DNA from: Ruditapes philippinarum
Taxonomy: Eukaryota
DNA: 62,937 nucleotides
Reading direction: 5' to 3'
Assembly: GCF_026571515.1 (NCBI RefSeq)
Contig: NW_026863253.1
Coordinates: forward strand, 62,001-124,937
Shown here piece after piece: positions 6,075 through 59,100 of the stretch. The notes beneath the pieces are model-generated. The model did not search any database, was not told where the DNA came from, and saw only the letters and a program-made list of their open reading frames with translations. Positions within the stretch are counted from its first letter, which is position 1. Every line of letters starts with the position of its first letter. The position numbers were made by a program, and so were the translations under genes.

Positions 6075-7905
6075 CGTACAGTGAGTGTGCCGAGCATGGC
6101 AACGAACCGGAGGAACTTTTCTGTTTCGGGCACGGGAACATGATTTGTGTCGTCTGCAGGCGATTGTACCATGGAAAGTAAGTACAGCTGGTCTATGTCT
6201 TTATTTTTTCAGAACATTGTAAGCGACACGTGTGCGTTTTCGATAATTTCCAACCTTCCTATATGTTTCTTTATAATTACCCGTACAATTTTATAACACT
6301 AGAGCTATATCTGATTTGTTTATTTCATGATTTGTATATATCTTGCTGCAAAAAAAGCCAATATAGACCATGCACTTAGTGCTACTCACTATGATAAACA
6401 AATGTAACATAAAAATATTATTTTATTTTAGAAAAAAAAACCAATATCTGTATGTCTTCTTTTTTTACAGATGCAAAAAAGTTGAACCTATATCAGACGA
6501 ATGTGTTGATTTCTCCAAATCGTACGTCAGTGGATCATGCACAAAGCAGATTCAGCACCTGATTCTGCAGTGTAAAGCCGTTGCTAAGGAACGCGACCGT
6601 GATTTGAAAAACCTTGACCTAAAAAGAAAGGAGATACTAAGCTCAATAATGGCCTTGAAGCAGAAACTTTTTGAAAAGATCGAGAAACTCACGTCAAGAG
6701 CAGCAGACGACTTGGATAGACTGTTTACTATAGAAACGCTTGAAATGAAGAAGCATTTTACATCATTGCGCGGAATGATATCAGAGCTCGAAGAGAAAAA
6801 GACCCGCATCGAGCAGTCACAGAGTCAAAGGTCAGAATTTGGTCTATTTATAGCAGTTCAAAAAGCGTTAAGAAAACAGACGGAAATGGCGTCAGCACTG
6901 AGAAATATTCACGACGAAGCACATAGGGTGAATTTAAAGTTCAAAGAGAGTGACGCCTTAGATAATGCTATGAAGGGTCTAAATAGTATGGGTGAAATTA
7001 TTCTTAATACGACGGAGTACAAAGTAATACCAAAAGACAAACGATCGGTGAAATCAAAGGAACCGGAAGAGTTCGAAATTCGGAAGCACGTGGACGAAAG
7101 AACGGCTCTTCTGATTGGACAAATGAATACTCGCAACCGAGACGACCAAGAAAAATGTTGGATCACCGGGATGGCCATTCTGAATGATAGTTCACTTTTG
7201 GTAGCTGATTATAACAGCAAGCGAATTAAGTTAATCGGGCCAAACCAGGAAATCTTGAAATTTATTCAATTATCGGTACCACCTTTTGATATTGCGTTAC
7301 TGGACCAAAAGACAATGGTTTGCACATTACCAGAAGCTAAACAAATCCAGTTTTTAAGCATTGATGGGAAATCAGACTTGAAACCCGGAGCTGAGCTGAA
7401 ACTTGACTTTGATTGTAATGGTATAGATGTTTCAGGAGGGAACTTAGTACTTACAAGCATCGCAGACAAATACGTAACGCTTATATCTCTTACAGGTGAC
7501 GTCATATGGACGACAGCTAGTGACGTCAATCACGGGGGACGCTTATTTGAATGGCCGTGGTATGTCAAAACTAATACTGAAACTGGTGAAATTTATGTTT
7601 CAGACAGGTCAAAGAATACAGTAACGACCTTAAATTGTGACGGTAGCGTTTTAAGCGTTCGTGACGTCAGAGGGAAGGGACCGAGAGGTCTTACATTTGA
7701 CGGAGTAGGGAGTATGTATGTCTGTCATTACATGGCGGACGAGCTGGAGATTATTAGCACCGAGAACCCACGTGACAGACGGGTGTTACTTAACAAGTCA
7801 GCCGGGATCCAGCACCCACAGTGTCTATGCTTTGACGGGGTTAGGGGTCAACTTTTACTGTCGGTTATTAACTCGGATACTATTTCCATTTTTCAAATCA
7901 AGTAG
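6075..7905 (+). CDS. B-box / coiled-coil / NHL-like beta-propeller protein (TRIM-like, no RING seen); exons about 6075-6177 and 6471-7905; start codon unresolved
   Basis: Exon 6075-6177 encodes CAEHGNEPEELFCFGHGNMICVVCRRLYHGK (B-box) and splices (GTAAGT 6178, AG 6470) in frame to CKKVEP...; helical region, then propeller repeats (LLVADY, IYVSDR, PRGLTFDG..SMYVC). Confidence 0.85.
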
Positions 7906-13258: not shown

Positions 13259-16200
13259 TTATAAAGGTAAGTCAGACACTGTGCTTGTATTTTCCATATT
13301 TCTGTCATGTACAATGACATTGAAATCTATGGGCTTCAGTGTCAGCCCATACTTACTGTCAACCACAGGGTGCTCACCAGGCACTATTTCAAACTTGCAT
13401 TTTTGCACGAGAATTGTAAAGAAAAGGAAGAGTTCCATCTTAGCCAACTGCTCTCCCGGACATTTTCTTTTCCCAGACCCAAAAGGAAGAAAACAGTCAA
13501 GTTTTGTTCTATCTACAATGAGTCTCGTACCGGAAGTATCCAAAAATCTTGACGGATTGAATACTTCCGGTTCATGGAAGAATTCTGGGTCATGGCTGAC
13601 GGACCATAGATTAACAAACACAAGCGTTTTCTCCTTGATGAAATATCCGTTGATGTAGGTATCTTTAGTCGTACTGTGTGGTAATGCAAATGGGAAAATA
13701 CACGAGTGCCTCATAGTTTCAAGGATGGTCGCCTCAGTGTAGGGCAATTCGGAAAGATCGGTTACATCCGGATCTTTGTCGGTGCCGTAGGCGGCCAGAA
13801 TTTCTTTGTAGACTTTCTCCTGCCACTCCGGGTTTGTCATAAGGTAGAGAATAGACCATTGGAGTGTACTTGCTATTGTATCAAAACCAGCACCTAGATG
13901 AAGTAGAAGGAAAAGGGGAAAAAAACATTAACAATTTACCAAACAATCGTTAATTATGTGAAGAAAAAAAGAATTACCAGGTGCTTTAATTAAACAACGA
14001 AATAGTATTGCCAACGATAGGCCAATTTTAAGGCAACAATGACATGTTAAGAAAGTAGCTGTCATATTCTTTATAATTATGCAAAACCGTTCCCTCTAAG
14101 AGTAAATCTTTACAAAATCATGCCAATTAGGTATAACGAAAACGTACGAAGAACCCGAGAGCGGCTTTGTGTTAATTACAATATATTTTCCGAAAATTTC
14201 CGAAATTTACCGATTCACTAGGGTTCGTAATCCTTAAGTTAAACACACTATACAAAATAATAATAAAAATTACGTACCAATGAGTTCCTGAAGTGTAGTC
14301 ATAATATGTACGTCCGTCAGTCCGACGGACTTTTTCTCCTCCGTGGACGTCTCCTCCGTTGCCTTGATGAGGGCATCTGTGATGTCACGAACGTGGGTTG
14401 CGTCATAGGTGTCAAGATGTTCACGTTGTTTCTTCAGGCATAGATTATCCATCGTGTCCAGAATCTTCAGAAATTGTTTAAAAGACCGTTTTGTAAAATG
14501 TCGCATCCATGGCATAATGTCAACAGGATTTCCTGGAAAATACAATAGATTGAAAGAAAAAAGATCTTTACTAAAAATGTCATCTTTTAACCTTGTCGGT
14601 GAAATTTTTGTTTAATGGAATATAGAATGGAATATAAGATACAGCTAAACGTGGTTCAAAGACCAGTTAGATGATCAGATTTTAGTTGAAGAATAAATAA
14701 AAAAGTGCAGACAAACCACCAGTATAAAACCGACCAGAAAGTTGTCTTTGTCGATTGACATCTTGTTTAGACAACAACAACAAATGATAATAAAATAAGA
14801 TGAATTAATAATAATAATAATAATTTGAGATATTGATTATTTTAAGTTTTAACTTATTAAGTCGTAGTTTTCCTAAGATGTGTGTCCTATTAAGGTAGTC
14901 GTTGACAGAATTTGATTGTACTTTAATTGCATTGATAAGAAGCATGATCTCACTAATGCAGTAAAGTGGATTGGTCTGCAATGGGCACATTTTCCATAAG
15001 CACATGTATAATAAAACAATAGAAATGTGCCATTTCGATATTCTTAAAAAAACTTGAAAAGAAATGTTGATGGAATTGTAAGTGATTTAGTAAGATCATT
15101 TATTTATGATGATCAAGAGTATTTTGTTCTAGAACATTTTATCGTCTGCTGTCTAAATATAATTATGTAAAATCAGATTAGGTATCTCACACTTGCCAAC
15201 AACATACATATATATAATTCTTTCATAGTATAATGTTATGTCTGATATTATTTACAGGGCCTCTTTCGTTTGCTTGTTTATTTATTTGTCATTCAAATAG
15301 TCACACAAATATGTACATGTAATTGTGGTCAAAAGATAATTAGCATAATGGACGGAGCAATCTGTTGCAATTACGAAATCGGTTCGACCTTTATATTTAG
15401 CACTGAATCTCATTAAATACGGACATTTTAATATATTACAACCAGAAAATTATGTTATTAAACAACTATTATATCATATCCTCCAGTTGTTGTCGTGCAA
15501 CAGACTTGTACTTGACGGGTCAACACACATGACGTCACGTGAACGTTTGTATATATAGCACTGAGCCCGGACAATCCCGGTAGTTTGATCTGATAAGTCT
15601 GGGAAAAATGTAAGTTGTTGCTTTTTTATCTTCTGTCAATTATTATTAGATTATTATTTAAATTTTGTTTTTTTTTTAAAGATTTTTTTTTCTTCGCAAA
15701 ATCTGTTACCGGAAACAGATTAACGATGCTAGCTTTCAGGGCTTCCATTTCTCTTTTTGTTACCTCATGACGAAAATAATAAGAACGTTTTTATATGGTT
15801 ATCTTCTTTATAAAGAAATTTATCATTTATTGCTTAATATTTGAAGGCTCAGTATGCCTCAGAAATCCATTTAAAAAAAAAATCTTTAGGAATAACAAAC
15901 ACGTGATTAATAATGTTTAAATAATGGATAAAGTGCATGTTAGATGTTTTACAGCGTTGAAAATAAAATAAGGTAGCAAAAAGATACAAAGTACATGTAG
16001 TAAATTGTATTTGGACTTTCATTCAAAATACTAATTCACTATTATTATACCAATTGCAAACAGAAATATATAAAAGATAGTTTGTGCATCTAGCAAATGA
16101 AGAGTTTGTTTTTGTAAACTGTAACAAGATACAAAAAAAAACATATACAAATTTGAAAACTTTAGCATTTCTGAGGCATAATGTACCTTTAAGATTTATT

Positions 16201-20570: not shown

Positions 20571-21139
20571 TTTTTTGACGAAATGCTTCATAAATAACCT
20601 GACGAGGTCTGCGTCTTGTTTATGCCTAGGTCACAAATAAGAAAATGCCGCCGGGCGGCGTCTGTTTCTCCAAAAAATCGCAATATCGACCGGCGTCCGT
20701 CCGGCGGCAGTGACTATCGGACGGCAGCAGCTGAAAATTTTGTTCATCGGGCGGGCGCATTCGAGTTTTAAGTACTACTTAAAAGCTAACGGCGGCAGGA
20801 CGATAATTTTTGGGGTCACTGAGTATAAAATATCATCGAGCGGACACCGCTCGGTCGCCGGGCGGCGACTGGTCGATGTTTTTGTGATCGGGCGATTTTT
20901 TTTTCTATTAAAACACCGTCCGATTTAAAAGGCTTCCGGGCGGACATCGGCCGGGCCCCGCCCGGTGCCTGAATAGAGACGAGTAGTCAAACGATTATCG
21001 CCCGGTAACCGGACGATTCATGTACAGGCACCGGGCGGTCATCGGTTTGTCATCCGGCGACCGGGCGGCTTGTGTTTGTTGTAATTTCAGCTATTGCCTC
21101 AAAAATATATTTGTGTAATTCTTTTCAATACTAGTAAAC

Positions 21140-22435
21140 ATGGACATTCTTGTGGAGCAAGAACGTGTTCGTCGATATTTCGTACGGCAAAGACAAAATA
21201 TAATTGTTTATTTAGCAGCATTATATGACGAGGGTCAGTTCAGCGGAGGCCGTAGGAGAAGGTCAATCTGGGTGAAGCCATGGCTTCAGAGAAGGGTTTT
21301 CTATGGCCAATACGACACTCTTATGATGGAACTAATGCGAGAATCGCGCGGGGACTTCAAAACATACTTACGCATGGAACCGGAGATGTTTCGAGAGATT
21401 CTTACTAGGGTGGCGCCACGAATCACCAAGAATAAGCAAAGGCGACCTCCTTTAGAAGCAGGGCTTAAAGTAGCTATTACCATGCGCTTTTTAGCTACCG
21501 GAAATTCCTACCACAGCCTTGCGTTTGACTTTCGTGTTGCTCACAATACTATTTCACTCTTCGTGCCGGAAGTTTGTGAAGCCATTGTAGCTGAGTTTAA
21601 AGACGAGGTCATATGTACACCATCAACCCCCGATGAATGGATCGAAGTTGCAAATAAGTTTCGACGGCGATGGGATTTTCACCATACATGCGGCGCACTC
21701 GACGGAAAGCATATTGCGATCAAAAAACCAAAGCAGTCTGGAAGTCAGTTTTACAACTACAAGGGGTTCTTTTCTATTGTTCTGTTAGGTCTCGTCGATG
21801 CAGATTATAAGTTTTTGTGGGCGAACATTGGAGCTAACGGTTCGTCTTCAGACTGTGGCGTATTCAATCGGTCTAGCCTGGAGCCAGCCCTTAGAGAAGG
21901 AACTCTTGGGTTGCCACCACCAGAACCACTTCCATTTGACGATAGAAACACGCCATATTTCTTAGTGGGCGATGACGCCTTCCCTTTGAGATCGTATCTC
22001 ATAAAACCCTTTCCCCATCGCTTCTTGGACCACGACGAAAGAATTTTCAATTACCGTTGTTCCAGGGCTAGGCGAGTAGTTGAAAACGCTTTTGGAATTC
22101 TTGCGGCAAGATTTAGATGCCTTCTTACCACGATGCAGACAACCCCAAGGAATGCCAAGAGGATAACAAAGGCTTGTTTGATCTTGCACAACCTGATGCG
22201 GGATCGTTATCCGAGCTTGCAGAACGAGGACCTTGACCATGATGACGGACAGGGGGATGTCGTGCCAGGGGCTTGGCGGAATGTTGGCGTGCTCGATGAC
22301 GTCAATGATGTCGCCAGAGGACCAAGAGGAACAAGGGAAGGGAAGCAGCTTCGTGTGTATCTAAAGCACTATTACTGCAGTGATGTTGGGCGCGTACCCT
22401 GGCAAGAAGCAGCTATTAATATGCCCTTGCGATAG
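21140..22435 (+). CDS. Harbinger DDE transposase (HARBI1-like), 431 aa, single exon
   Basis: RFLATG, GALDGKHI, YNYKGFFS, GSSSD, GDDAFPL, ARRVVENAFGIL, LHN motifs; no stops. Confidence 0.95.
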   Translation: MDILVEQERVRRYFVRQRQNIIVYLAALYDEGQFSGGRRRRSIWVKPWLQRRVFYGQYDTLMMELMRESRGDFKTYLRMEPEMFREILTRVAPRITKNKQRRPPLEAGLKVAITMRFLATGNSYHSLAFDFRVAHNTISLFVPEVCEAIVAEFKDEVICTPSTPDEWIEVANKFRRRWDFHHTCGALDGKHIAIKKPKQSGSQFYNYKGFFSIVLLGLVDADYKFLWANIGANGSSSDCGVFNRSSLEPALREGTLGLPPPEPLPFDDRNTPYFLVGDDAFPLRSYLIKPFPHRFLDHDERIFNYRCSRARRVVENAFGILAARFRCLLTTMQTTPRNAKRITKACLILHNLMRDRYPSLQNEDLDHDDGQGDVVPGAWRNVGVLDDVNDVARGPRGTREGKQLRVYLKHYYCSDVGRVPWQEAAINMPLR

Positions 22436-47350: not shown

Positions 47351-50300
47351 TCAAGTCGAAAATGATACTCTTGAAGTTGTCGTTGACATATTAGGAATTG
47401 TTACACTTCCGGTTGCCTCACTTGGAATACTTCCGTTAAGAACGTCAATTTCTTCCTTGCGTTCGGGTTCAACCTTGATTACTAATGCACCAATAATATC
47501 AAACATTTCCCTACAGTGAAACGTAGCAGATATGTCCAAGTTTTTACTCTTTACTGGCATCAAATTTACAATTCCCGTCCATTCGCATTGTGCTGGAACA
47601 TTACTGAAAAGAATAGTTCAACACATAACTGAAAATGGTAGATCAGTGATCTAGTATTTTTTAAAAGAATACGTTTATTTTATTTTACACTGTAAATTTA
47701 AATAAGTTGATACCTTGATACTCCAATTTGCTTGTCAGAGTACTTAGAACTTTATACAAATGTAGGAGTTGTCATACATCTGCACTATCCTCGTTATAAA
47801 TCGTCATTAAAGTATATTAACTTTAAGCTTAAAATCTTTCTAAGATATTAAATAATTAAAATATTGAACACTTTATAATAACAGAGGATCACGAACTCAA
47901 ATTTTTTGATGAACATCATGGACTCGAGACCAACACCCTCCACACTGACTGTACAGTTTTTCAACGTCTTGTGAAGTGGATTTTTAAAGAATAACTTCAG
48001 AGGAAAGTTTGATCTCTTATAGACCGTTTCTTCTACCTAAGTTGAAAAAAATAACATTGCATTTAATGAAACACAGAAATAATTATTCCACCAGCGCAAT
48101 TCAAAATCGAACATAATGACATTAGGCAAGGCAGTGTTACAGTTTATCAAGAAGTAATGCACTGGAAAAGAACACTGTCTTTAAAGATATACTATGCTCA
48201 TCATAGACATATCATCACAATATGACGTCAAGCAAATTCTATAAATAAAAGAAAAGTCGCACGATACTTACTGACATTTCTAAATGAGGTTTTTGTAGAA
48301 GAAAATCGTCCACACATGCTTCTATCTGGTCTGTTTCCTCCACCCTGAGGTATCCCACTTGTCTCATACAAGTATGTTCTGCTAGTTTACCTAGATAATC
48401 GCTTTCATATATACCTAGTTGTAACTGCTCACCTGTAATTTAAGGTACATTTTTTAACCATAACATTAGGTCAGACAATCTGACAAGGGACTTACCTGAC
48501 CTTCTCTGGTTACTGTTGGAGAGCGGACCGGTAGATTGGAGGCATCGAGGGGTTTCCTTATTGTTTACGTATTTTATCGACGAAAAAATTCATTTGACAC
48601 CTTCATTCTTTTCAATTGAAAATTTAATGAAACAATTTTATTAAATAACATATTGAACCTTTCAAAAGCTGAAGGCCGTTTTTTCCTGTTGAATCCGTTT
48701 CATCGTTTTTATCTGCTTTGAATGTGGAATTAGTCCATTCCAAGTTTAAGGAATCTAAATATCTAAATACAAATAAATAACAATTAACGGTACAGAGTCT
48801 GTGCATATTCCATAATCAGGCTGGTCGGCTCTATGCTGGTGGAAAAGACTAACCACTTCCAGTTCCAGCACACTAAGAGTTAAAAAAGCAAAAAACAAAA
48901 ACATACTCTCTCCCGGTGGAATAGTTAGCGTCCATTGTTTTTGTTTTATACATTGATGTCGTCTGCCATTATAGTGAACGCTCTCACACAGTAACATGAC
49001 TTGGACCGTACGTTCGTCCATAGCGTAACTTGTTATAGTTGCCTTTACGTTGAAGTCGTCACCGATATACTCAAATTCTTTATCGTCCAGACGAAATTGT
49101 ATATCCTGTAAGATTAAAAGTGCATTCATTTACTTCCATAAAACTTTATAAAAAACACATAAAATAAATATATTTATTATTATTCAGCACCGTAAAACTA
49201 TGGGCGATTATGTCAAATAATATTGCCAGAAAGTCTATTCTTGAAAGGGATAGTATTTCAAATAACTATTCCCTCATCGTCGTGGGTTCGAATCCCATGA
49301 GGGATTTTGGATTCTTTCATGTGAGATAGCTATTCAGGTACCCATCAGTGACTGAAATAATGAATGGAATTGCACCTGAGGTTTTCCTCCACCCGTAAAG
49401 GATATTGAGGGACAGTGAAAAGTTAAATACCCTACATTCCCGTTCAGTAAAGATCCAATACTGAATAAAGAATTCAATAGTGATTAGTATAAAATAAATC
49501 CGTTATACCTTTGCTTTACATTTATGCATAGGTCTTGCTTTTCTAACTGGTCTTTGAACCACTTCTCTTTCCATCTTTGTTCCTGGTGAAAAGAAGAAAG
49601 AAAAAATAGGTCCCGTTTTAAAGGAACTCTAATGGCACTAAAACATAAAATTTGAAAACGTTACAAATATCAAGTAAAGCACTTAAAATTGAAAAATCTG
49701 CTTCTTGTATTTATAATCAGTTGGTTTACCTTTCTTGTATTTATAATATTAGTGACCATTTTCCCATTTGTCTTACACGCAAACTTTCAAATATCAGTGT
49801 TAAAGGTCCCATGCATAAAACAATAACCTTCCGGTCTCTTAAACACTTTGATGAAAATCGATTTTTAACCGAATTGTCAGAGCAACCCTGGTCAGAAGTA
49901 GCATCTGTAGAAAATCAAGATAACTCTATAGATATGTTCACTGATAAATTTTTGTCTGTCCTTGAAAAACATGCACCAACTAGAAAAAAACGAGTAAAGA
50001 AGGTCACCCAACCAAACTGGATTAATAAAAACATCCTCGATGCTATTAAAACAAAACACCAGTTTCATAAGGTTAATGACACATATAATTACAACATATT
50101 GGAAACAACACGTTAAGTCTCTCATATATGATTCTAAGCGACAATATTATAATGATACCATCAATCAAAACAAATACAACCCAAAGAAATTATGGACTGG
50201 TCTAAAGGAATTATCTTGTTACAAATTCAAGGTCCAAACACATTTTATTGATGATGATGATGGCAACCCGGTTTCTGACCCTTTAATCACTGCAAATTTA

Positions 50301-52099
50301 TTCAACAGACAATTTGCGAATCTCCACCAATCCCATCATGCCATTAATCAGACTGGTTATGAAAATCCTGAGCTTGTTGAACTAAATGCATCTAAACTTC
50401 AGCATATACCCCCTTTCAAAATACCTAAAATAGAGCTCTCTTATGTGTTTAACCAATTAAAATCGATTGATATTACAAAGTCATGTGGGTCAGATGGTCT
50501 CAGTGCAAGGTTTCTAAAGTTATCGGCCCACATTATTGCTCCCATACATACCACTATATTCAATAACAGTATATTAAACAATACATTTCCTAAATCATTC
50601 AAAAATGCAAAAGTCATTCCTGTACATAAAAAGGGTTCTAAAAGTGATAAAAGAAACTATAGGCCTCCATACTTCCCTTGATATCACTTATTCTTGAACG
50701 TCATGTCAGTTCACATTTAAAGCAATACCTTGAGAATAATCAACTTCTTTACCAACGTCAGTCTGGATTCAGGTCAAATCATTCATGTTAAACTGCACTG
50801 ATAAGAATTATTGATGATTGGATTACAGCTATTGACAAAAATGAAATAGTTGGTTCATTTTTCTTGATTTCTCTATAGCTTTTGACTATGTTGATCACTG
50901 CATTATTATTGAAAAGCTTAGAATGTTAAACCTAGACCCTTAATCAGTTGCTTGGTTATCCTCCTATTTAGATTGCAGAATCCAACAAACTTACATATCC
51001 GGTTTATATTCAGAGTCAAGTTCAGTAACTACTGGAGTTCCTCAGGGCTCAGTGCTAGGTCCTATACTGTTGTTAATCTATATCAATGACCTGCCTTTGT
51101 CCATGGAAAAAACAGAAACTGATATTTTTGCTGATGACACCACCCTTTCAACCTCTGATGTATCCCTAAACAGAGTAGTTGAATCTCTTACTCATGATCT
51201 TTTAAATGCCAACAAATGGTGTGATTTGAATCGCATGTCTATCAATGTTAACAAAACTAAGGTCATGTATATTTCCTCAAAACACAAGCAAAATTATATT
51301 CATGAAAGTAATCCTTGTATTTTATATAAAACAGAGCAAATTTTTTGTAGCTCTGAAGAAAAATTATTGGGTATTACAATTAATAACACCTTGTCTTGGC
51401 AAAGCCATATTGATAATGTTCTTAAAAAGTGTAACTCATTGTTATCACGTATAAAATTATTTATATCTATACCTGTACGTAAAATGTTTTACAATGCATA
51501 TATTTTACCACATCTTGATTATTGTTGCATAATTTACGGTAACTGTACGTCTTTTCTAGAAGATAAACTCATTAAGTTCCAAAAGAGAGCTGCAAGACTA
51601 ATTCTAGACAAAGATTATGACACTCCATCTGCTGAACTTTTTTCTGAACTCCGCTGGATGACCTTTTCACAGAGGGTTGTTTTTCAAAAAGCTATTATGA
51701 TGTTTAAAATAATGAATAATCAGGCGCCTTCCTATTTATTGAATAATTTCATTTTATCGTCAGATGTTCATACTCGCATTTTGCGTTCATCATCTGATTT
51801 TCAACTTTATACCCCTAGACCAAATACTGAACAATTTCGTAAGTCTTTTGTTTATTCTGGATCTTGTATTTGGAACGGCCTTCCTGATTATATTAAGTCT
51901 GCTACATCTGTTAACCATTTTAAAACCTTATACTTGAGGTTTTATCACGCATTGATGTATACAAATTGATAATCTCCTGTATGTTTTACATTTATGTATT
52001 TTAATAGTTTGATTATGTTAAATTTATATTGTTCCTTGTTGAGGGCCTCATGGAAGATTGATTTGTTTGTTCAAATGAGTTCTCTCGTTAAATAAAGTC

Positions 52100-52144
<45 letters not shown>

Positions 52145-55100
52145 ATCACTTGGTTTACCTTTCTTGTATTTATAATCACTTGGTTTCCCTTTCTTGTATT
52201 TATTATCAGTTGGTTTACCTTTCTTGTATTTATAATCACTTGTTTACCTTTCTTGTATTTATAATCACTTGGTTTACCTTTCTTGTATTTATTATCAGTT
52301 GGTTTACCTTTCTTGTATTTATAATCACTTGGTTTACCTTTTTTGTATTTATTATCAGTTGGTTTACCTTTCTTGTATTTATAATCACTGGTGATATCTT
52401 GTTGTATTCTACTCATCTCAGCAAGATTGTACTTGTATGATAACACTGCTGGTCGTCCATCCGGGGTCTTAGAACTAATTGATTGACCTATCCTGAAATG
52501 GTGACGTTCACATCACATGGTATGATAATGTTATGGTATATCATAAGGTAGTTAGTTACAACAGCAGTAGTATCAAAACAGCGTGTTCAATCTTTATAAT
52601 ACCATATTATTATATGAATTTTAACTATGGTGCCATATTTAGGCCATGCACAGTTTAATGTGGTGTGACGAGAAATGCAAAATGTTCAAAATACGACAAG
52701 AGTATTCCATCTTATTGAACAGAGCATATACTGTACGGATGTACGATCTGTTGTTGAATATGATGGTAAACTCAAATTTAAGGATGAAAATACTGAATTA
52801 GGTCAAGCAACGTTGTCAACAGGTGATGAAGATAGACAAATAACAATTGTGGTGTTTTTCTTAAACTCTCAAAACGGTGACCTAGTGGTTAATGTGACAG
52901 CCTCACATCCCAGGGTTTATAGGCTCGAGCCCTACTTGGTCCACAACCAAGTTTCCTCTCATGATACCTGTCCTAGGAAGGGACTTGAGAGTGGTTGAAA
53001 TAAACTTAAGTAAACAAGCTCAAAACGCAGTATGTGTAAACTTACTCGGACGGTTTTCGGGCTTTTATCGATACTACTAGTAATAAATCCAATAATATTT
53101 TCAGATCAATGACAAACTAGCAATTTTTGTATTTACCTGGACTCCTCTACATTGAATACTGTCCAGTTGCCCATGTCCACTTTCAGCCAGTGTACAACGT
53201 TAGCGTTAATCTCGGCAAACACGTTACGTACGTCATATTTGACGTCAAGTAATCCGTTCTTAACGGCAATAAGTGGTGCTGGACCACAACTATGAACACC
53301 TGTAATTACCAATAAATTGCTTCTTACCTTCTTAATAAAATCCCTTTTGCCGAATTAACCGTCAAATATTTCATAAAATGTACCCAAATATTTCATAAAA
53401 TGTACCATATAAGTGACAAAATGTATATATTTCATAATGTATTCAGTTTTCTTAAATCAAAACAAAATACAATAAACATGTAAACTTTATTTCTTTGATG
53501 CCGTGTATAATATTTGCAAATACTTGCAAGTGCCCGAAATACTTGTTTAATATTTGATAAGATACGGTTGCTGTGTTTGTTTTCTTATTAGTTAGTTTAC
53601 AAGAATAGCAAAGAACATTTACAAGTATTTTGTAGAAAAGTAAAGTTAACCATTTGTGCTAGAAGTTTGTGGTGTGGCATCTAATGCCTGCCAGTCCTGT
53701 TCATTACACGGTTTAACAACATCCGGTCGCCGCATCCATACGTCATTCCATACGTGAAAATTCCTAGATCAAGGGAAAATAAAATATTTACCTTTTAGTT
53801 TTATGAATCTGTTGATAGTGAAATGTGGACCTATATAAAAACTTTTTACTGGCCACCCGGTGAGCTCAATAGGTATAGCATTGGACTGTGAATTGGGCGA
53901 CCTGGGTTCGATTCCCGGACGGTGCATGTCACTTTCATTGTGACTGGTCATGAAATCTTTTCTACGGTCATTCGCACTGTACCTCTGCTCTGGCATGAAT
54001 AGAAGTTTCACTTCCTTGCGTAAGTAGAGGCATCTTGTACTGGTAAACTGTTTGACAGCCTGCCGAGGAACGATACGGTGGCTGAACTGTGCTCTGGTCA
54101 GTTCAATGCGGCTACCTGCCGTGATCCGGAGTGAAAACCACCAACACCACACCAAATTTCATTATGGTTAGCTTCAGGAATACTTGTTATGTGATATAAA
54201 TATATTGCTGGTATTACACAATTATCTTGTTCTCACCATACAAGATCGTCACTATCGTCATCGTCGTCACGCATTTCTTCTATAGATCCGTCTTCCTTTA
54301 ATTCATAGTAGAAATCTATAGCCAGTCGTCCGTCCGTCCCGCGTCCAGAGTTATAACTGGTCACACATCTACATGGAATACCGATTGCCCTACAAACTAA
54401 ATGGTACCATACATTACCAAATACAATGTATATAAAACATAAATTACGTTAAACCGCTTGCACTAGCACTGTTGTGGGTTCGAATCCCAATAAAAAGAAA
54501 CTCCTTTTTACTAGCCTTCTAGCATATTGAAAACCGGTTGTTCTACCAAGGCCAGTTTATGTGCTATGGATTCATCCTTAAGCCTGGGACGGAATTTTAA
54601 GTCCCAGCTTAAACGTTTAAGTTGCGACCTGACCATTCATGTGTCAATGACTCTAAAAACGATTCTTAAAACTTATTAATATATCTTTAAAAAATGCTTA
54701 TTTAAACCTATCAAATTGATACATTTCTATTGTCTCCATCAATATCTGAAATACTTTTGGCAAATGTGCACATTGTAGACCAAAAACAGTAAGTTGTTGC
54801 CGATTTTGCAACCATTCTTTAGAAAATTCAAACGAAGAATTGCCTTTTAATTAAATAACGCCAAAGGTAGTACATCTTAAATATTTTAAATTAAAGGAAT
54901 ACAATTAGTTCAAATAAACAAACATACTCGTTGTAACAAGTCCAGCATAGACAAAACATTGTCCATATTTAACTGGTTCCGCATTATCTCCCTTGCATGC
55001 AAGAACATTTTCCAGATATTGTTTCAAAATGGCGACACTTCCGCTCCACGTGGTTGGAGGGCGTCCATCTGTGAAATCATTCGTTGACCATTTCCCTCTC

Positions 55101-56118
55101 AGAACACCACAATTGTTTTCATTATCATTCAGCTGTAACAAAATATATTTTCATTTTACAAACATATTGACGCATGCGCATTGCAAGCTTAAAATTTCAA
55201 CAATTTAAATAAATTTAATACAAATGAAACTGTGTTCTTTTCATTTCAATATGATGAAAATTGGTTTGATTAACAGACAACTAAATTAAATATCATTAAT
55301 AATTTAGGTAGTGGTATTCGCATCTCAATCCAAGGATCGTGATTGTGAACCCTTATGGGGTCACGCCCATGTTTTCTCATTTGCCACCAAAGGTTATAAC
55401 AGGAAACAGGTTCGAGACTTGTAGGCCCCTACAAATAAGTTGCAAGCCTTCTTCTCGTTCTATACTGATGGTAAAGGTTAATCACTTCCGGTTCTAGCAG
55501 GTTTTGGTTAAAAACACTCAAATGACCTCTTTCAAGAAAGCCACTTACTATCGTAGATATGTTTCTTGTAACAGCGACCGGGTCACCCATAGCTTGAGTT
55601 GTGCGAAAATTGAACCCACGTTTTATTATATATAAACAAGCTTCTAAAATGCCACTTTCAAACTGAAATAGACGAAAAACTTATTGAATATGCCGTTTCC
55701 TAAATGAATTTAAAGAGACGGATTCTTTCAAACTAAAGGGCATATACAATGTAAATACAACAAAAAAGTGCTAAAATTGAAATTGAATGATAATCAGTAA
55801 TGTACATGTAAAGTTCATCAATTAAAATATTAAAATACGTGTGTGTATTGTCTTAGAAATGCTACTCTTGAACTGGAAAGGAACACAAAAGTTTTTCAGA
55901 ATCCACTAAAAGTGTCCATAAATTGCAGTAACAGGAGTTATAAGCAATGCTTCTAAAATGGCTATGCCGTTATATTTCTAATGTTAAACAAAGTCTTTCT
56001 TTAATTTTCTAAACAAAATGATATCTAAACTTTTAAATATATCAACAATAATTCTTCTGAAATTTGTTATTATTCACATTTTTAAAAGTTCTATATTGGA
56101 ACCTGGAGGAAATAAAAG

Positions 56119-56171
<53 letters not shown>

Positions 56172-59100
56172 GTCAGTCAGTCAATCAATCAATCAATCAA
56201 TCAATCAATTTTAACTTAGAGAATATATTACCTGACCGAACACCCATGGTTTAACATTCATACGTTTCCGGCATCCTGTAAACATGATGCCTGCAGAGTT
56301 CAAAATATACTCGTCCAGTAGGGGCTCTGGAGGGAAATACGCTGTATCATCTATATAAAAGTAAAGAAATGGTACCAATTCAATTTACATGTTTTGATTT
56401 TGTTCCAAATGTTAAATGCTCTAATTATATACATTATTGAAGAATTATTAAACACATATTTGACATTTGAAATTTGAATTAAAGCAATATTGATTTCTGA
56501 TGCATTATGTGCCTTGAAATTCATAAAATGACATTCTCGAGCTTCAGATCAATAAACAAAAAAAAAAAAAAAAAACTAACAAAAAAACTGTATCGAAGTT
56601 AGGTTAATGCGAATAGATTATCTGTCACCCATTGATAAACATAACAAAGGAAAATACTAAATTATTTTTATATATGAAACATACTTTTGCACCAAGGGTC
56701 TATTGATAAACATAACAAAAAGAAAATAGTAAATTATTATTATATATGAAACATACTTTTGCACCAAGGGTTAAAGAGGACGTAAATTCTGTCTGGATGC
56801 TCGTAAGTGACGGTAGCAGTCTCTGTCTCGGACCGTAGTATACTCTGTAATGAAAACTTCCAGTCGGATACGATACAATCTGCTGGTGTGAACACCCATA
56901 AGTTTGCTACAATACAATCCTGAAAATAAAATTGTATTTGTTAAACATACAATGTCTTTTATTTATCCATTGTGAATGTTTTAACATGTATAGCAGGTAC
57001 TGTCAAATACATTTGTTTTAGAAACTGAATAAAATTTCATAAAACAGACATTTATTTCATGAAGAAAACATATTAAGAAATTATTTACAGTAATTCCTCT
57101 CTTAAAAACAACAGCGTTACGAACAAAAATAAGTCGCACAAACAACATAAAACAGGGTAGTAAAATATGCAACAATCATATGAGTTAAGTTTGGAGTTTA
57201 AGTTAATAGTTGGAACAGACTGGGGTATTTCGTATCGAAATTGCATCCAAGAGTGATAGGGAAAATGTTCTACGTTGCATCCTCCAAATTTTGAAATAAA
57301 AGCACATCTTTAAAAACAAACCCGGATACTTTTAGAAACTGTGTTTATTCCTTCTTCAGCCGACGGCTCTACAACGGAAGTGTCGAGGGCTCTCATTCAA
57401 ACAAATCACTATGTGGAATGCATCAAAGATTTAACATTTTGTTGTTTCCACGGAGCGAAACAGGGACCTTATAATATTAAAAACAATGCCTATACGCTAT
57501 TTCACAAGAATAGGGAACTGGATTATAAATGATTCTGATTATGAAAGATTGTCTTATACTATCTATAGAACTAGTTTGTAGTCATGTATGTAACTGAGGT
57601 TGTTGATATTCTTACTCATGCACACATATAAGCATAAGGCTCAATTTTTTTTAAATACACTTCAGTATTTACAATATAACTGTGATATACTTTACCCTAT
57701 TTTTAGTACCAATAACTGGTAGAAAGTCAGATTTCCATCCACTGGAACCCTGGGAAGTGTATGACGACAAACAAACCATTGTGTCATTTCCGGGTAACGG
57801 TTTGTCTCCTAAAAAAGATGAATTTAAAACAACAAAAAAACAACAACAACAACAACAACACAATTTATTTCCCATTATTCAAGCTTTAAAAATACGCCAC
57901 CTAGGATGCAATATTTATGGAGATGAAAAACTTGAAAAATGTTGCTTTAATGGTATTATTTATGATTCCTAAAACAACTCAAGATTCGTGCCTTTTCAAA
58001 ATATCATAACTTTATTTTCAAGAAATTATCTACATCCTTATGAATAGGAAAAGTATGAACTAAGAATAATTGCATAGGAGTGGTCCCTAAGATTGATGAA
58101 TATCAAACTTTTTTGTAAGCATGTGTACCCACAAATCAAAAGGGAGGGAGTTTATTCGAAAGAAGTCTTTACAAGAAATATATGATCTTTATCGAAACAT
58201 TCATTATTCTATTCCGATACAAACATGTCTTCGACTTACCTGTTTCGAAGTAAAATTTGAGTTCGTCATTCAAAGAATTATATGGACGGTTAAAGGTCAA
58301 GGTTATTTTGAATGGTTGACCTCTGCGCACTACAAGCGTACCCGATTTAGGTAAACTGAATTTCTTGGTATGATGGTGTTCAGCATTTTCCCAGGCCCAC
58401 GTTTGTAACTTCCGGATATACAGAGGAACTATAAAAATAACAATTTGCACTGGTTTCATTTCTAAGAAAATATAAAATGAACTTTTATATCATACAAACT
58501 TTGAAAACTTTAACTTTGAAAGTGCTATCTAGTATTTTTTATTATATTTTAGTACTGTGGGCAAATGTGTTAAATGTAAAATAAACTGGTTCATATTTAA
58601 TATCAAATTAAACATTAAATTGCCATCTTCGTGCAAAATTTCCCAAATCGTAACATTTTTTTTTGTAAAGTCGATAGAGTACTTTATGACTTGATCGGCA
58701 CAAAAGGTATTTTTGATATAAATGAATTTTATAATTCAAATTTCTTTTGCTTTTAAAATCAATACTTCTATAATTCATGTTATTATATTTGATCGTTTAG
58801 CTATTCTACCTCTTCATTTGGTGGCCTTATTTAATTTCTATCGAAATGTTGGGCAAAAATAATTGTCTCTAAGGGTTAAAAAATATATTTTGCTAGTTCT
58901 TTAATCTTTTCATTGATGAATTGAAAATTAATTTATTTAATTTTTTATTCTTTACCATTTTTGTCACGAATAACGGACCCCGGAAGTATGGTCTGTTTAG
59001 AAGGTTTGTGGGTAACGATTTCTTCATCTGTTCCTAGAGTGGGCGGAGTCAAAATAACAGTCCGAAAAACTGGTTTCTTTTTCCCAAATGTAATCTTTAA

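What the first reader, a model, noticed from the sequence alone, without database searches (positions are those of the whole stretch)
52141..52492. Splice-donor ladder: a minisatellite built from a transglutaminase exon end could add 0-40 aa of Lys/Tyr-rich repeat
Seen: the 30-bp unit (minus strand AGT GAT TAT AAA TAC AAG AAA G|GT AAA CCA) is the last 22 nt of the exon plus the first 8 nt of the intron, so nearly every unit carries an AAG|GTAAAC donor. Donors ending the exon at 52368, 52338, 52308, 52278 and 52248 are in frame and stop-free, adding alternating [10 protein letters not shown] / [10 protein letters not shown] decapeptides. A 29-bp unit then shifts the later donors (52219, 52159) out of frame, and one unit has lost its GT. 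Known: this is the conserved YKY.EGS..ER region at the end of the catalytic core, and lysines are the amine-donor substrates of transglutaminases. Inference: donor choice or VNTR allele length could produce an isoform series with a cationic, self-crosslinkable loop. It may equally be a neutral expansion.
Basis: partly seen in the sequence, partly recalled or inferred. Interest (0 to 1): 0.78.

Follow-up and report, generated by a model that had tools for sequence, protein, structure and literature searches.

The report
Splice-junction minisatellite in clam transglutaminase
An intron of a clam blood-cell transglutaminase gene begins with about ten tandem copies of its own exon end and splice donor; the one assembled mRNA that spans it uses only the first donor, so it looks like an ordinary example of a repeat type already described.

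Summary
A 30-bp repeat (52144-52389, minus strand) has a unit made of the last 22 nt of a transglutaminase exon plus the first 8 nt of its intron. It repeats the AAG|GTAAAC donor. Four extra donors are in frame and stop-free, two are frame-shifted by a 29-bp unit, and one has lost its GT.

New points:
A 5'-truncated antisense LINE (49753-52143) split it, and 1.7 more units lie at 49700-49752.
- The gene is complete: 15 collinear exon matches and an intact Cys/His/Asp triad. It is spliced in two RNA-like runs.
- The only contig that spans the junction (1 of 1) joins exon end 52368 to acceptor 49582. None of the three RNA-like runs has a contig on the array.
- Six of six bivalve orthologues read ..YK[Y/H]KKGT.. 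across the junction with no insertion.

This is a known kind of repeat: the "mirage" minisatellites of amphioxus and the boundary minisatellite in intron 7 of human F7, where only the most upstream donor is used.

The scan has already noted the same kind of repeat on other DNA of this genome (12 notes hold the word "mirage"). A second, two-copy example sits in this same gene.

The isoform ladder is unsupported, but contigs cannot exclude minor use. Interest is low.

The parts
47447..58408 (-). Transglutaminase gene (hemocyte protein-glutamine gamma-glutamyltransferase-like), with 15 collinear exon-level matches
   Evidence: tblastn of database protein P0001 gives 15 HSPs at 54-89% identity. 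The closest named orthologue is P0018 (Mercenaria), 716 of 871 aligned residues identical. Pfam finds Transglut_N, Transglut_core and Transglut_C on separate exons. Triad motifs [16 protein letters not shown] and DATPQ are present.
52368..52492 (-). Exon of 125 nt (tenth exon-level match) ending ..[10 protein letters not shown] + G; the authentic donor GT is at 52367-52366
   Evidence: X17 contig record 16 lies on 52367-52491 as one 125-nt piece. It is joined to 53136 upstream and to 49581 downstream. Sequence.
52144..52389 (-). Main block of the 30-bp minisatellite: 8 full units plus the first 7-11 nt of unit 9. Pseudo-donors correspond to exon ends 52338, 52308, 52278, 52248 (in frame), 52219, 52159 (out of frame) and 52189 (GT lost)
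52101..52143 (+). (TTA)14 tail of the LINE. Read on the gene's sense strand it ends in AATAAA at 52105-52100
49753..52100 (+). 5'-truncated LINE (end of the endonuclease domain plus reverse transcriptase), antisense to the gene, inserted into unit 9 of the array
   Evidence: Pfam RVT_1, E 1.6e-10, on 50944-51966. The first look found 591 candidates in the genome, and the 40 copies scored are 92-98% identical. DNA-run depth is 200-2400 against about 7-9 on single-copy flanks.
49700..49752 (-). Remnant of the array beyond the LINE: the rest of unit 9 (26 nt, with an intact AAAG|GTAAACC) and a partial unit 10 (21 nt)
   Evidence: also found as L002.
49509..49582 (-). Next exon of 74 nt, (G)GA ACA AAG.. 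= [25 protein letters not shown]; the acceptor AG is at 49584-49583
   Evidence: Joints 49581->52367 (X17) and 49104->49508 (X16, X17), both CT..AC, which is GT..AG on the minus strand. Sequence.
56631..56771 (-). Second boundary-spanning tandem duplication in the same gene: 72 bp x 2.0, made of the last 16 nt of the exon ending ..NPWCK plus 56 nt of intron, donor AAAA|GTATGT
   Evidence: No RNA evidence: it lies outside the stretch laid.

Best explanation
This is a boundary-spanning ('mirage', F7-IVS7-type) minisatellite. A 30-bp segment straddling the exon-intron junction of an expressed clam transglutaminase gene was tandemly amplified into the intron. It then spread further as a 60-bp two-unit block, presumably by slippage or unequal exchange (inferred). 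That gave about ten copies, all inside the intron. A LINE later landed in unit 9. The spliceosome uses the first, ancestral donor (exon end 52368) and removes the remaining copies with the intron. This matches the strict preference for the most upstream of identical donors shown experimentally for human F7. The in-frame, stop-free state of the first four extra units follows from copying 22 coding bases plus GTAAACCA in multiples of 30. It is not a sign of selection: one unit in eight already carries a frameshift and one has lost its GT. The array is best read as a tolerated by-product of a minisatellite-prone genome. Its only likely effect is to supply in-frame back-up donors if the first one is damaged (inferred from the F7 experiments).
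For: The unit is unique to this locus: 9 of 9 genome matches. The array continues on the far side of a LINE whose family has copies 92-98% identical, so the array predates that insertion. The 1109-nt contig of run X17 is spliced 53297|53136-52491|52367-49581|49508-49104 with GT..AG ends, and its exon piece is exactly 125 nt. Depth over 52192-52385 is 0, 0 and 1.05 in X15, X16 and X17. The 1.05 equals the 19 exon bases of that one contig. The DNA run X3 has 14.8 there. No RNA-like contig fits two places of the stretch, while two X3 contigs do. Six of six orthologues (Dreissena, Mya x2, Mercenaria, Mactra, one unnamed) have K-K-G-T invariant with no insertion. A search of 1.84 billion representatives with the 81-aa read-through found only the canonical transglutaminase plus unrelated periodic proteins. 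Paralogue L005 has the same junction and phase and no array. The exon plus array has no special RNA structure, z = 0.24. Precedent: in F7 IVS7 only the most upstream of 5-9 identical donors is used (PMC1557585). Amphioxus mirages do not disturb regular splicing (PMC3087553 passages).
Against: Only one RNA contig spans the junction. All runs were Logan contigs, which drop rare variants and give no junction counts. The tissues and conditions of the runs are unknown. The X16 contig reaches only about 20 nt past the acceptor, within the 22 nt shared by all units, so it is uninformative. As summarised in the introduction of PMC1557585, the two nearest pseudo-donors are used constitutively in human IFI 6-16 and CBS, so 'first donor only' is not universal. 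The units are nearly identical: 4 of the 5 full AGTGATTAT-type units are the same. Their youth therefore cannot separate neutrality from selection. Array length was not verified independently, because X3 contigs stop at 52360 and 49731.
Confidence: 0.75

Rival explanations
1. Isoform ladder: the in-frame pseudo-donors are used some of the time, or depending on allele length. This would insert 10-40 residues of Lys/Tyr-rich GKP[ST]D[YN]KYKK repeats near the end of the catalytic core, as in the human IFI 6-16 gene.
For: Four pseudo-donors are identical to the authentic one over -3..+6 and keep the frame with no stop. IFI 6-16 and CBS do use their two nearest pseudo-sites (PMC1557585 introduction). 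The insertion point aligns to the FXIII-A stretch that leads into the link to beta-barrel 1 (domain borders recalled), where extra residues might be tolerated.
Against: One of one spanning RNA contigs is canonical. None of the 3 RNA-like runs has a contig on the array, while the DNA run does. None of the 6 orthologues has an insertion. No protein in the representative library carries the repeat after a transglutaminase core. One unit is frame-shifted and one has lost its donor, as expected without constraint.
Confidence: 0.12
2. The repeated donors act as RNA elements and code for nothing. As a cluster of U1 snRNP binding sites just after the real donor, they could strengthen exon definition. 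They could also suppress premature cleavage at the AATAAA (52105-52100) that the antisense LINE tail places on the sense strand right behind the array.
For: Seven intact copies of a donor that fits the MAG/guragu consensus at -3..+4 lie within 250 nt (consensus as quoted in PMC1557585). An AATAAA follows directly on the sense strand. That U1 suppresses intronic polyadenylation is recalled knowledge and comes from no call.
Against: The array predates the LINE, so it cannot have arisen for that purpose. The F7 study found no autonomous regulatory element in the neighbouring intron sequence (section heading seen in the outline; stated in the discussion). Nothing here tests U1 binding or 3'-end use. 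The many other such arrays noted in this genome point to a mutational cause, not a functional one (unchecked notes).
Confidence: 0.08
3. Assembly artefact: the array or its copy number was produced by mis-assembly of a short repeat.
For: No independent contig spans the array. The X3 DNA contigs stop at its two edges, 52360 and 49731.
Against: X3, a DNA run, has contigs on the array (depth 14.8 against about 7-9 on single-copy flanks) and reaches both edges. The units differ in an ordered two-type pattern with private changes. The array is interrupted by a LINE, with unit phase preserved across the insertion. An artefact would not produce that.
Confidence: 0.03

Closest known systems
Human F7 intron 7 37-bp VNTR (Borensztajn et al. 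2006, PMC1557585; abstract, introduction, first results section and discussion read)
   Same: The first monomer of an intronic minisatellite spans the exon-intron boundary, so the authentic donor is followed by several sequence-identical pseudo-donors. mRNA uses the most upstream one. As it happens, both genes serve clotting or cross-linking.
   Different: The F7 unit is 4 nt of exon plus 33 nt of intron, occurs in 5-9 copies, and is a proven length polymorphism tested with 50 constructs. Here the unit is 22 nt of exon plus 8 nt of intron, 30 bp long, so four pseudo-donors stay in frame. The array is split by a LINE, the host is a bivalve, and usage rests on a single contig.
Amphioxus 'mirage' minisatellites (Adh3, globins BflGb6/BflGb9; passages of PMC3087553 read; the original Adh3 paper not seen)
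   Same: [quoted passage not shown] Many copies carry AG/GT signals, and regular splicing is undisturbed.
   Different: They were described in a cephalochordate, at either exon edge. Length instability was shown there and is untested here.
Human IFI 6-16 (intron 2) and CBS (intron 13) donor minisatellites, known here only from the summary in the introduction of PMC1557585
   Same: The donor is reiterated by a boundary minisatellite. These are the precedents for real multi-donor use, in which the authentic site plus the two nearest pseudo-sites are used.
   Different: There the extra donors are seen in transcripts. Here none was seen (0 of 3 RNA-like runs).
Other splice-junction arrays noted by this scan in the same genome (notes s1-810574, s1-808180, s1-803757, s1-803816 and others; unchecked AI notes)
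   Same: Same genome and the same kind of repeat. The follow-ups likewise found no use of the extra sites.
   Different: Most of those are acceptor-side arrays or longer ones. This one is donor-side, in frame, and has spliced-contig evidence for the first donor.

Membership tests
Boundary-spanning ('mirage' / F7-IVS7-type) minisatellite | Head-to-tail tandem array with a unit of minisatellite size | tested here: met
   Period 30, 8.4 copies, 91% matches; 8 full units plus a split ninth and a partial tenth.
Boundary-spanning ('mirage' / F7-IVS7-type) minisatellite | The first monomer spans a real exon-intron boundary, so the splice-site sequence is reiterated in the intron | tested here: met
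   The boundary at 52368|52367 is fixed by the spliced X17 contig. Unit 1 is 22 nt of exon plus 8 nt of intron. Paralogue L005 has the same junction.
Boundary-spanning ('mirage' / F7-IVS7-type) minisatellite | Regular splicing uses the authentic outermost site; the copies are silent or minor | tested here: inconclusive
   One of one spanning contigs uses the first donor, and no RNA-like contig lies on the array. Contigs cannot exclude minor use.
Boundary-spanning ('mirage' / F7-IVS7-type) minisatellite | Length polymorphism or instability (VNTR behaviour) | not testable with these tools
   The contigs of DNA run X3 break at both edges of the array. No long reads were laid.
Multi-donor minisatellite giving an in-frame isoform series (IFI 6-16 type) | Transcripts joined from two or more of the reiterated donors | tested here: not met
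   Only the joint 49581->52367 was found, and depth on 52192-52366 is nil in X15, X16 and X17. The data are limited to contigs.
Animal transglutaminase (Transglut_N / Transglut_core / Transglut_C) | Domain architecture | tested here: met
   Pfam hits on separate exons: Transglut_N 63.7 bits (above its cut-off), with Transglut_core 21.9 and Transglut_C 25.2 bits just under their cut-offs on these fragments. There are 15 collinear matches to P0001, which itself matches FXIII-A at 1.9e-84 and TG2 at 6.9e-81.
Animal transglutaminase (Transglut_N / Transglut_core / Transglut_C) | Catalytic Cys-His-Asp triad | tested here: met
   YGQCFVYAG (exon 55144-54929), NFHVWND and DATPQ (exon 53763-53650) are read directly and align to the orthologues' invariant columns. 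Enzyme activity was not tested.

The most novel reading that the evidence does not exclude
The pseudo-donors are not wholly silent. In some tissue or state, or in alleles where the first donor is weakened, the nearest in-frame copies (52338, 52308) would be used, as in human IFI 6-16. That would give transglutaminase forms with one or more Lys/Tyr-rich decapeptides just before the link to beta-barrel 1. The array would then be a heritable, length-variable source of protein variants and a built-in in-frame rescue for donor mutations. More broadly, the many such arrays noted in this clam genome could mark a junction-directed duplication process worth studying.
Probability: 0.12. Interest if true: 0.55.

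Novelty: new member of a known kind. Interest (0 to 1): 0.22.

Why it matters
Taken alone it matters little, being one more boundary minisatellite whose extra splice sites appear unused. It has three modest points of value.

- It is a clean natural test of 5' splice-site choice outside mammals. Seven intact, identical donors lie at 30-nt spacing, four of them in frame, so products of their use would escape nonsense-mediated decay and be visible if made.
- Together with a second two-copy example in the same gene and the other arrays noted by this scan, it suggests that this clam genome is unusually rich in junction-seeded repeats. That would be a genome-level question.
- It warns gene predictors. 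Reading through into the array yields a plausible open frame that is not in the mRNA.

Tried and rejected
- The 41-aa exon alone against solved structures gave 0 hits at E <= 10. It is too short and too divergent.
- AlphaFold2 of orthologue P0001 with the 6-row alignment gave mean pLDDT 34.1 and pTM 0.24. The model is unusable, so the structural place of the junction rests on the HMMER alignment to FXIII-A plus recalled domain borders. That alignment pairs the FXIII YKF..ER motif with the first of the exon's two YKY motifs. The exact equivalence is therefore ambiguous.
- The RNA fold of exon plus array showed no structure (z 0.24).
- L003 (contig C1954) matched the array at 71% identity. It is a separate 26-bp x 62 minisatellite of similar A-rich composition. 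I took this as resemblance only, because the exact unit occurs nowhere else.
- Apart from P0001, the hits of the 81-aa read-through were short transglutaminase fragments (four fetched) and other proteins. The three of those that I fetched are unrelated ten-residue-periodic proteins.
- A paper search on mollusc transglutaminase splicing gave nothing relevant in the 12 papers listed. I did not search for papers on this particular gene's array beyond.
- Independent verification of array length failed, because DNA contigs break at the array.
- No eukaryotic genomes other than this one could be searched, so the presence of the array in related clams stays unknown.
- I built and searched no joined spliced model. 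Exons were searched apart.
- Supplementary files of the papers were not opened. The additional files of PMC3087553, which show mirage alignments, may bear on how closely the unit structures compare.
Full report
**What is there.** Tandem Repeats Finder reports a 30-bp array at 52140-52389 (8.4 copies, 91% matches, score 437), directly beside (TTA)14.3 at 52101-52143. On the minus strand the array resolves into eight full units. Five are of type AGTGATTATAAATACAAGAAAGGTAAACCA and three are of type ACTGATAAT... They mostly alternate, so the array grew partly as a 60-bp two-unit block.

- Four of the five first-type units are identical.
- The fifth, unit 5 (52269-52241), lacks one base and is 29 bp.
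- Unit 2 has one private change, AAG to AAA.
- Unit 7 reads GGGAAAC and so has lost its GT.
- Unit 1 consists of the last 22 nt of an exon plus the first 8 nt of the intron.

Donors that would end the exon at 52368, 52338, 52308, 52278 and 52248 all leave phase 1 with no stop, adding [10 protein letters not shown] and [10 protein letters not shown] alternately. Donors at 52219 and 52159 are shifted to phase 0.

The repeat is far beyond chance and is private to this locus. A 26-nt core with up to 3 mismatches matches 9 times in the window against 0 in 100 shuffles. In the whole 1.41-Gb assembly, 9 of 9 matches lie here and the reversed control gives 0.

The array does not end at the (TAA)n run. 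Another 1.7 units lie at 49752-49700 on the minus strand: the last 26 nt of a unit with an intact AAAG|GTAAACC, then a 21-nt partial unit.

Between the two parts lies a 5'-truncated LINE on the plus strand, antisense to the gene.
- Its body is 49753-52100, with Pfam RVT_1 at E 1.6e-10 on 50944-51966.
- Its (TTA)14 tail is 52101-52143.
- Unit 9 is split by it with its register preserved. ATTATAA stands on both sides, a possible target-site duplication that cannot be told apart from the tail.
- The LINE family is abundant and fairly young. The first look found 591 candidates, and the 40 copies scored are 92-98% identical.

So the array existed before that insertion.

**The gene.** The minus strand from 58408 to 47447 carries 15 collinear exon-level matches, at 54-89% identity, to a 751-aa database protein, P0001. 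Its source names P0001 hemocyte protein-glutamine gamma-glutamyltransferase-like of Dreissena polymorpha.
- The closest named orthologue is that of Mercenaria mercenaria (P0018): 716 of 871 aligned residues are identical, and 40 of 43 in this exon. The host is therefore a clam close to venerids.
- Pfam finds Transglut_N (63.7 bits) on one exon. Transglut_core (21.9 bits) and Transglut_C (25.2 bits) fall just under their cut-offs on others.
- The catalytic motifs [16 protein letters not shown] and DATPQ are intact.
- P0001 matches human factor XIII A at E 1.9e-84 and transglutaminase 2 at 6.9e-81.
- The assembly holds many paralogues: 26 Transglut_N matches.
- One paralogue, on contig C4443 (L005), has the same junction and intron phase..QYKYIE|G then gtaggc.., followed by an exon starting GSERER. 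It has no array.

The donor at 52368 is therefore the ancestral one.

The exons were searched apart, and P0001 served as the full-length stand-in.

**RNA evidence.** The run search listed ten runs holding at least half of the sampled words, labelled DNA?, and three guessed-RNA runs holding 0.20-0.25 of them. That smaller share is about the exonic fraction of the query. I laid X15, X16, X17 (RNA?) and X3 (DNA?) on 48700-54500. All four are Logan contigs.
- **X17.** One 1109-nt contig (depth 10.7) is joined at 53297|53649, 52491|53136, 49581|52367 and 49104|49508. All four joints have CT..AC ends, which are GT..AG on the minus strand. Its piece on this exon is exactly 125 nt (52367-52491, two other letters). 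The transcript therefore uses the first donor (exon end 52368) and the acceptor at 49582, with no extra unit.
- **X16.** It has two of these joints (53297|53649 and 49104|49508), so it also holds spliced RNA of the gene. Its contig runs only about 20 nt beyond the acceptor, inside the 22 nt that all units share, and cannot say which donor was used.
- **X15.** It has none of these joints, and its contigs cross exon-intron borders. It behaves like DNA or unspliced RNA.
- **X3.** The DNA run has none of these joints.

Depth over 52192-52385 is 0 in X15 and 0 in X16. It is 1.05 in X17, which is what 19 exon bases of the 10.7-deep contig give over a 194-base bin. It is 14.8 in X3. No RNA-like contig fits two places of the stretch, while two X3 contigs do.

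In short, 1 of 1 spanning contigs is canonical, and 0 of 3 RNA-like runs hold any contig with array sequence. Contigs drop rare variants and give no counts, so use below roughly a tenth to a fifth of the transcript in X17 would go unseen. That bound is my estimate, not a tool result.

**Protein evidence.**
- A search of 1.84 billion representatives with the 81-aa genomic read-through (52249-52491) gave 16 hits. Only P0001 is a full transglutaminase, aligned over query residues 1-55.
- Of the other 15 hits I fetched seven. Four are short transglutaminase fragments and three are unrelated proteins with ten-residue periodicity.
- A word-indexed search with residues 425-515 of P0001 gave six proteins from Dreissena, Mya (two), Mercenaria, Mactra and one unnamed source.
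- In their alignment, 6 of 6 read ..DYK[Y/H]KKGT.. without any insertion, and K476, K477, G478 and T479 are invariant.

The Lys-Lys at the exon end is thus old, and the decapeptide repeat appears in no known protein.

**Known kind.** A paper search led to Borensztajn et al. 2006 (PMC1557585). I read its abstract, introduction, first results section and discussion.
- Human F7 has a 37-bp VNTR in intron 7 whose first monomer spans the exon 7 boundary.
- The 4-8 identical pseudo-donors are functional but silent.
[quoted passage not shown] When it is mutated, the next one takes over.
- The introduction lists further cases. LMNB2 and PDGF use the authentic site only. IFI 6-16 and CBS use the authentic site plus the two nearest pseudo-sites.

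Earlier notes of this scan supplied the word "mirage". I checked it in passages of PMC3087553. [quoted passage not shown] They do not disturb regular splicing although many copies keep AG/GT signals.

Twelve notes in this genome hold that word (unchecked). I also found a second example in this same gene. A 72-bp x 2 duplication at 56631-56771 spans the donor AAAA|GTATGT of the exon ending ..NPWCK, and read-through from there meets TAA after five codons.

**How it most likely works.**
- Shown: the structure, its uniqueness to this locus, its age relative to the LINE, and use of the first donor in the one spanning transcript contig.
- Inferred: origin by slippage or unequal exchange; choice of the first donor by the same upstream preference or exon definition as in F7; and the open frame as a by-product of a 30-bp unit, since one unit in eight is already shifted and one donor is dead.
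- A plausible side effect, by analogy with the F7 mutants, is that damage to the first donor would move splicing to the next copy. That would cost only a ten-residue in-frame insertion.
- The donor AAG|GTAAAC fits the MAG/guragu consensus quoted at -3 to +4 and departs from it at +5 and +6.
- No RNA structure singles out any copy (z 0.24).

**Rivals.**
- Isoform ladder, 0.12. It is unsupported but not excluded, given the IFI 6-16 and CBS precedents.
- A role as a cluster of U1 sites, 0.08. The array might strengthen exon definition, or it might mask the AATAAA at 52105-52100 that the LINE tail puts on the sense strand. This is speculative, and the array predates the LINE.
- Assembly artefact, 0.03. 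This is unlikely given the ordered unit variants, the LINE interruption and the DNA-run contigs on the array and at both edges. The copy number is unverified.

**Verdict.** This is a new member of a known kind, of low interest in itself. The genome-wide abundance of such arrays in this clam may be the more interesting question.

Noticed in passing
window 56631-56771 (minus strand): A second boundary-spanning tandem duplication in the same transglutaminase gene: 72 bp x 2.0, made of the last 16 nt of the exon ending ..NPWCK plus 56 nt of intron. It duplicates the donor AAAA|GTATGT. Read-through from the first donor meets TAA after five codons.
   Followed up: partly
window 52369-52491 (minus strand) and alignment A1: The exon holds two similar motifs, [10 protein letters not shown] and YKYKKG+TKMER. 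HMMER pairs the factor XIII YKF..ER motif with the first of them, while the paralogue L005 has only the second (..YKYIEG SERER). This may be an old internal duplication in this orthologue group, conserved in all six bivalve orthologues.
   Followed up: partly
window 53850-54140 and 49282-49475: Two very abundant short repeats lie in introns of the gene. DNA-run depth is about 17,600 and 11,600 against 7-9 on single-copy flanks, and both are also high in the RNA-like runs. The first translates with a tRNA-like ..GIEPRSP.. stretch, so it is probably a tRNA-derived SINE.
   Followed up: no
window 52100-52105 (minus strand): Read on the gene's sense strand, the antisense LINE's (TTA)n tail ends in AATAAA. 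This is a potential intronic poly(A) signal immediately behind the array of donor copies.
   Followed up: no
L003 = G000:C1954:38216-41424, array at locus 707-2309: A 26-bp x 62 minisatellite whose unit resembles the 30-bp unit (71% identity over 238 bases). It is A-rich, and the exact unit occurs nowhere else in the genome. I judged it a chance resemblance of composition.
   Followed up: partly
window about 54237-54254 (minus strand): One X17 contig of depth 3.8 replaces 31 letters at the acidic run ..[11 protein letters not shown] at the end of that exon with a variant reading [10 protein letters not shown]. This is probably an allelic difference in a poly-Asp stretch.
   Followed up: no
window 6367-7902 (+), 21119-22432 (+), 13262-13927 (-): Long open frames seen in the six-frame listing: a 512-aa frame with a coiled-coil and a repeat-rich C-terminal part, a 438-aa transposase-like frame, and a P450-like exon. 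I named these by eye only and ran none against Pfam.
   Followed up: no
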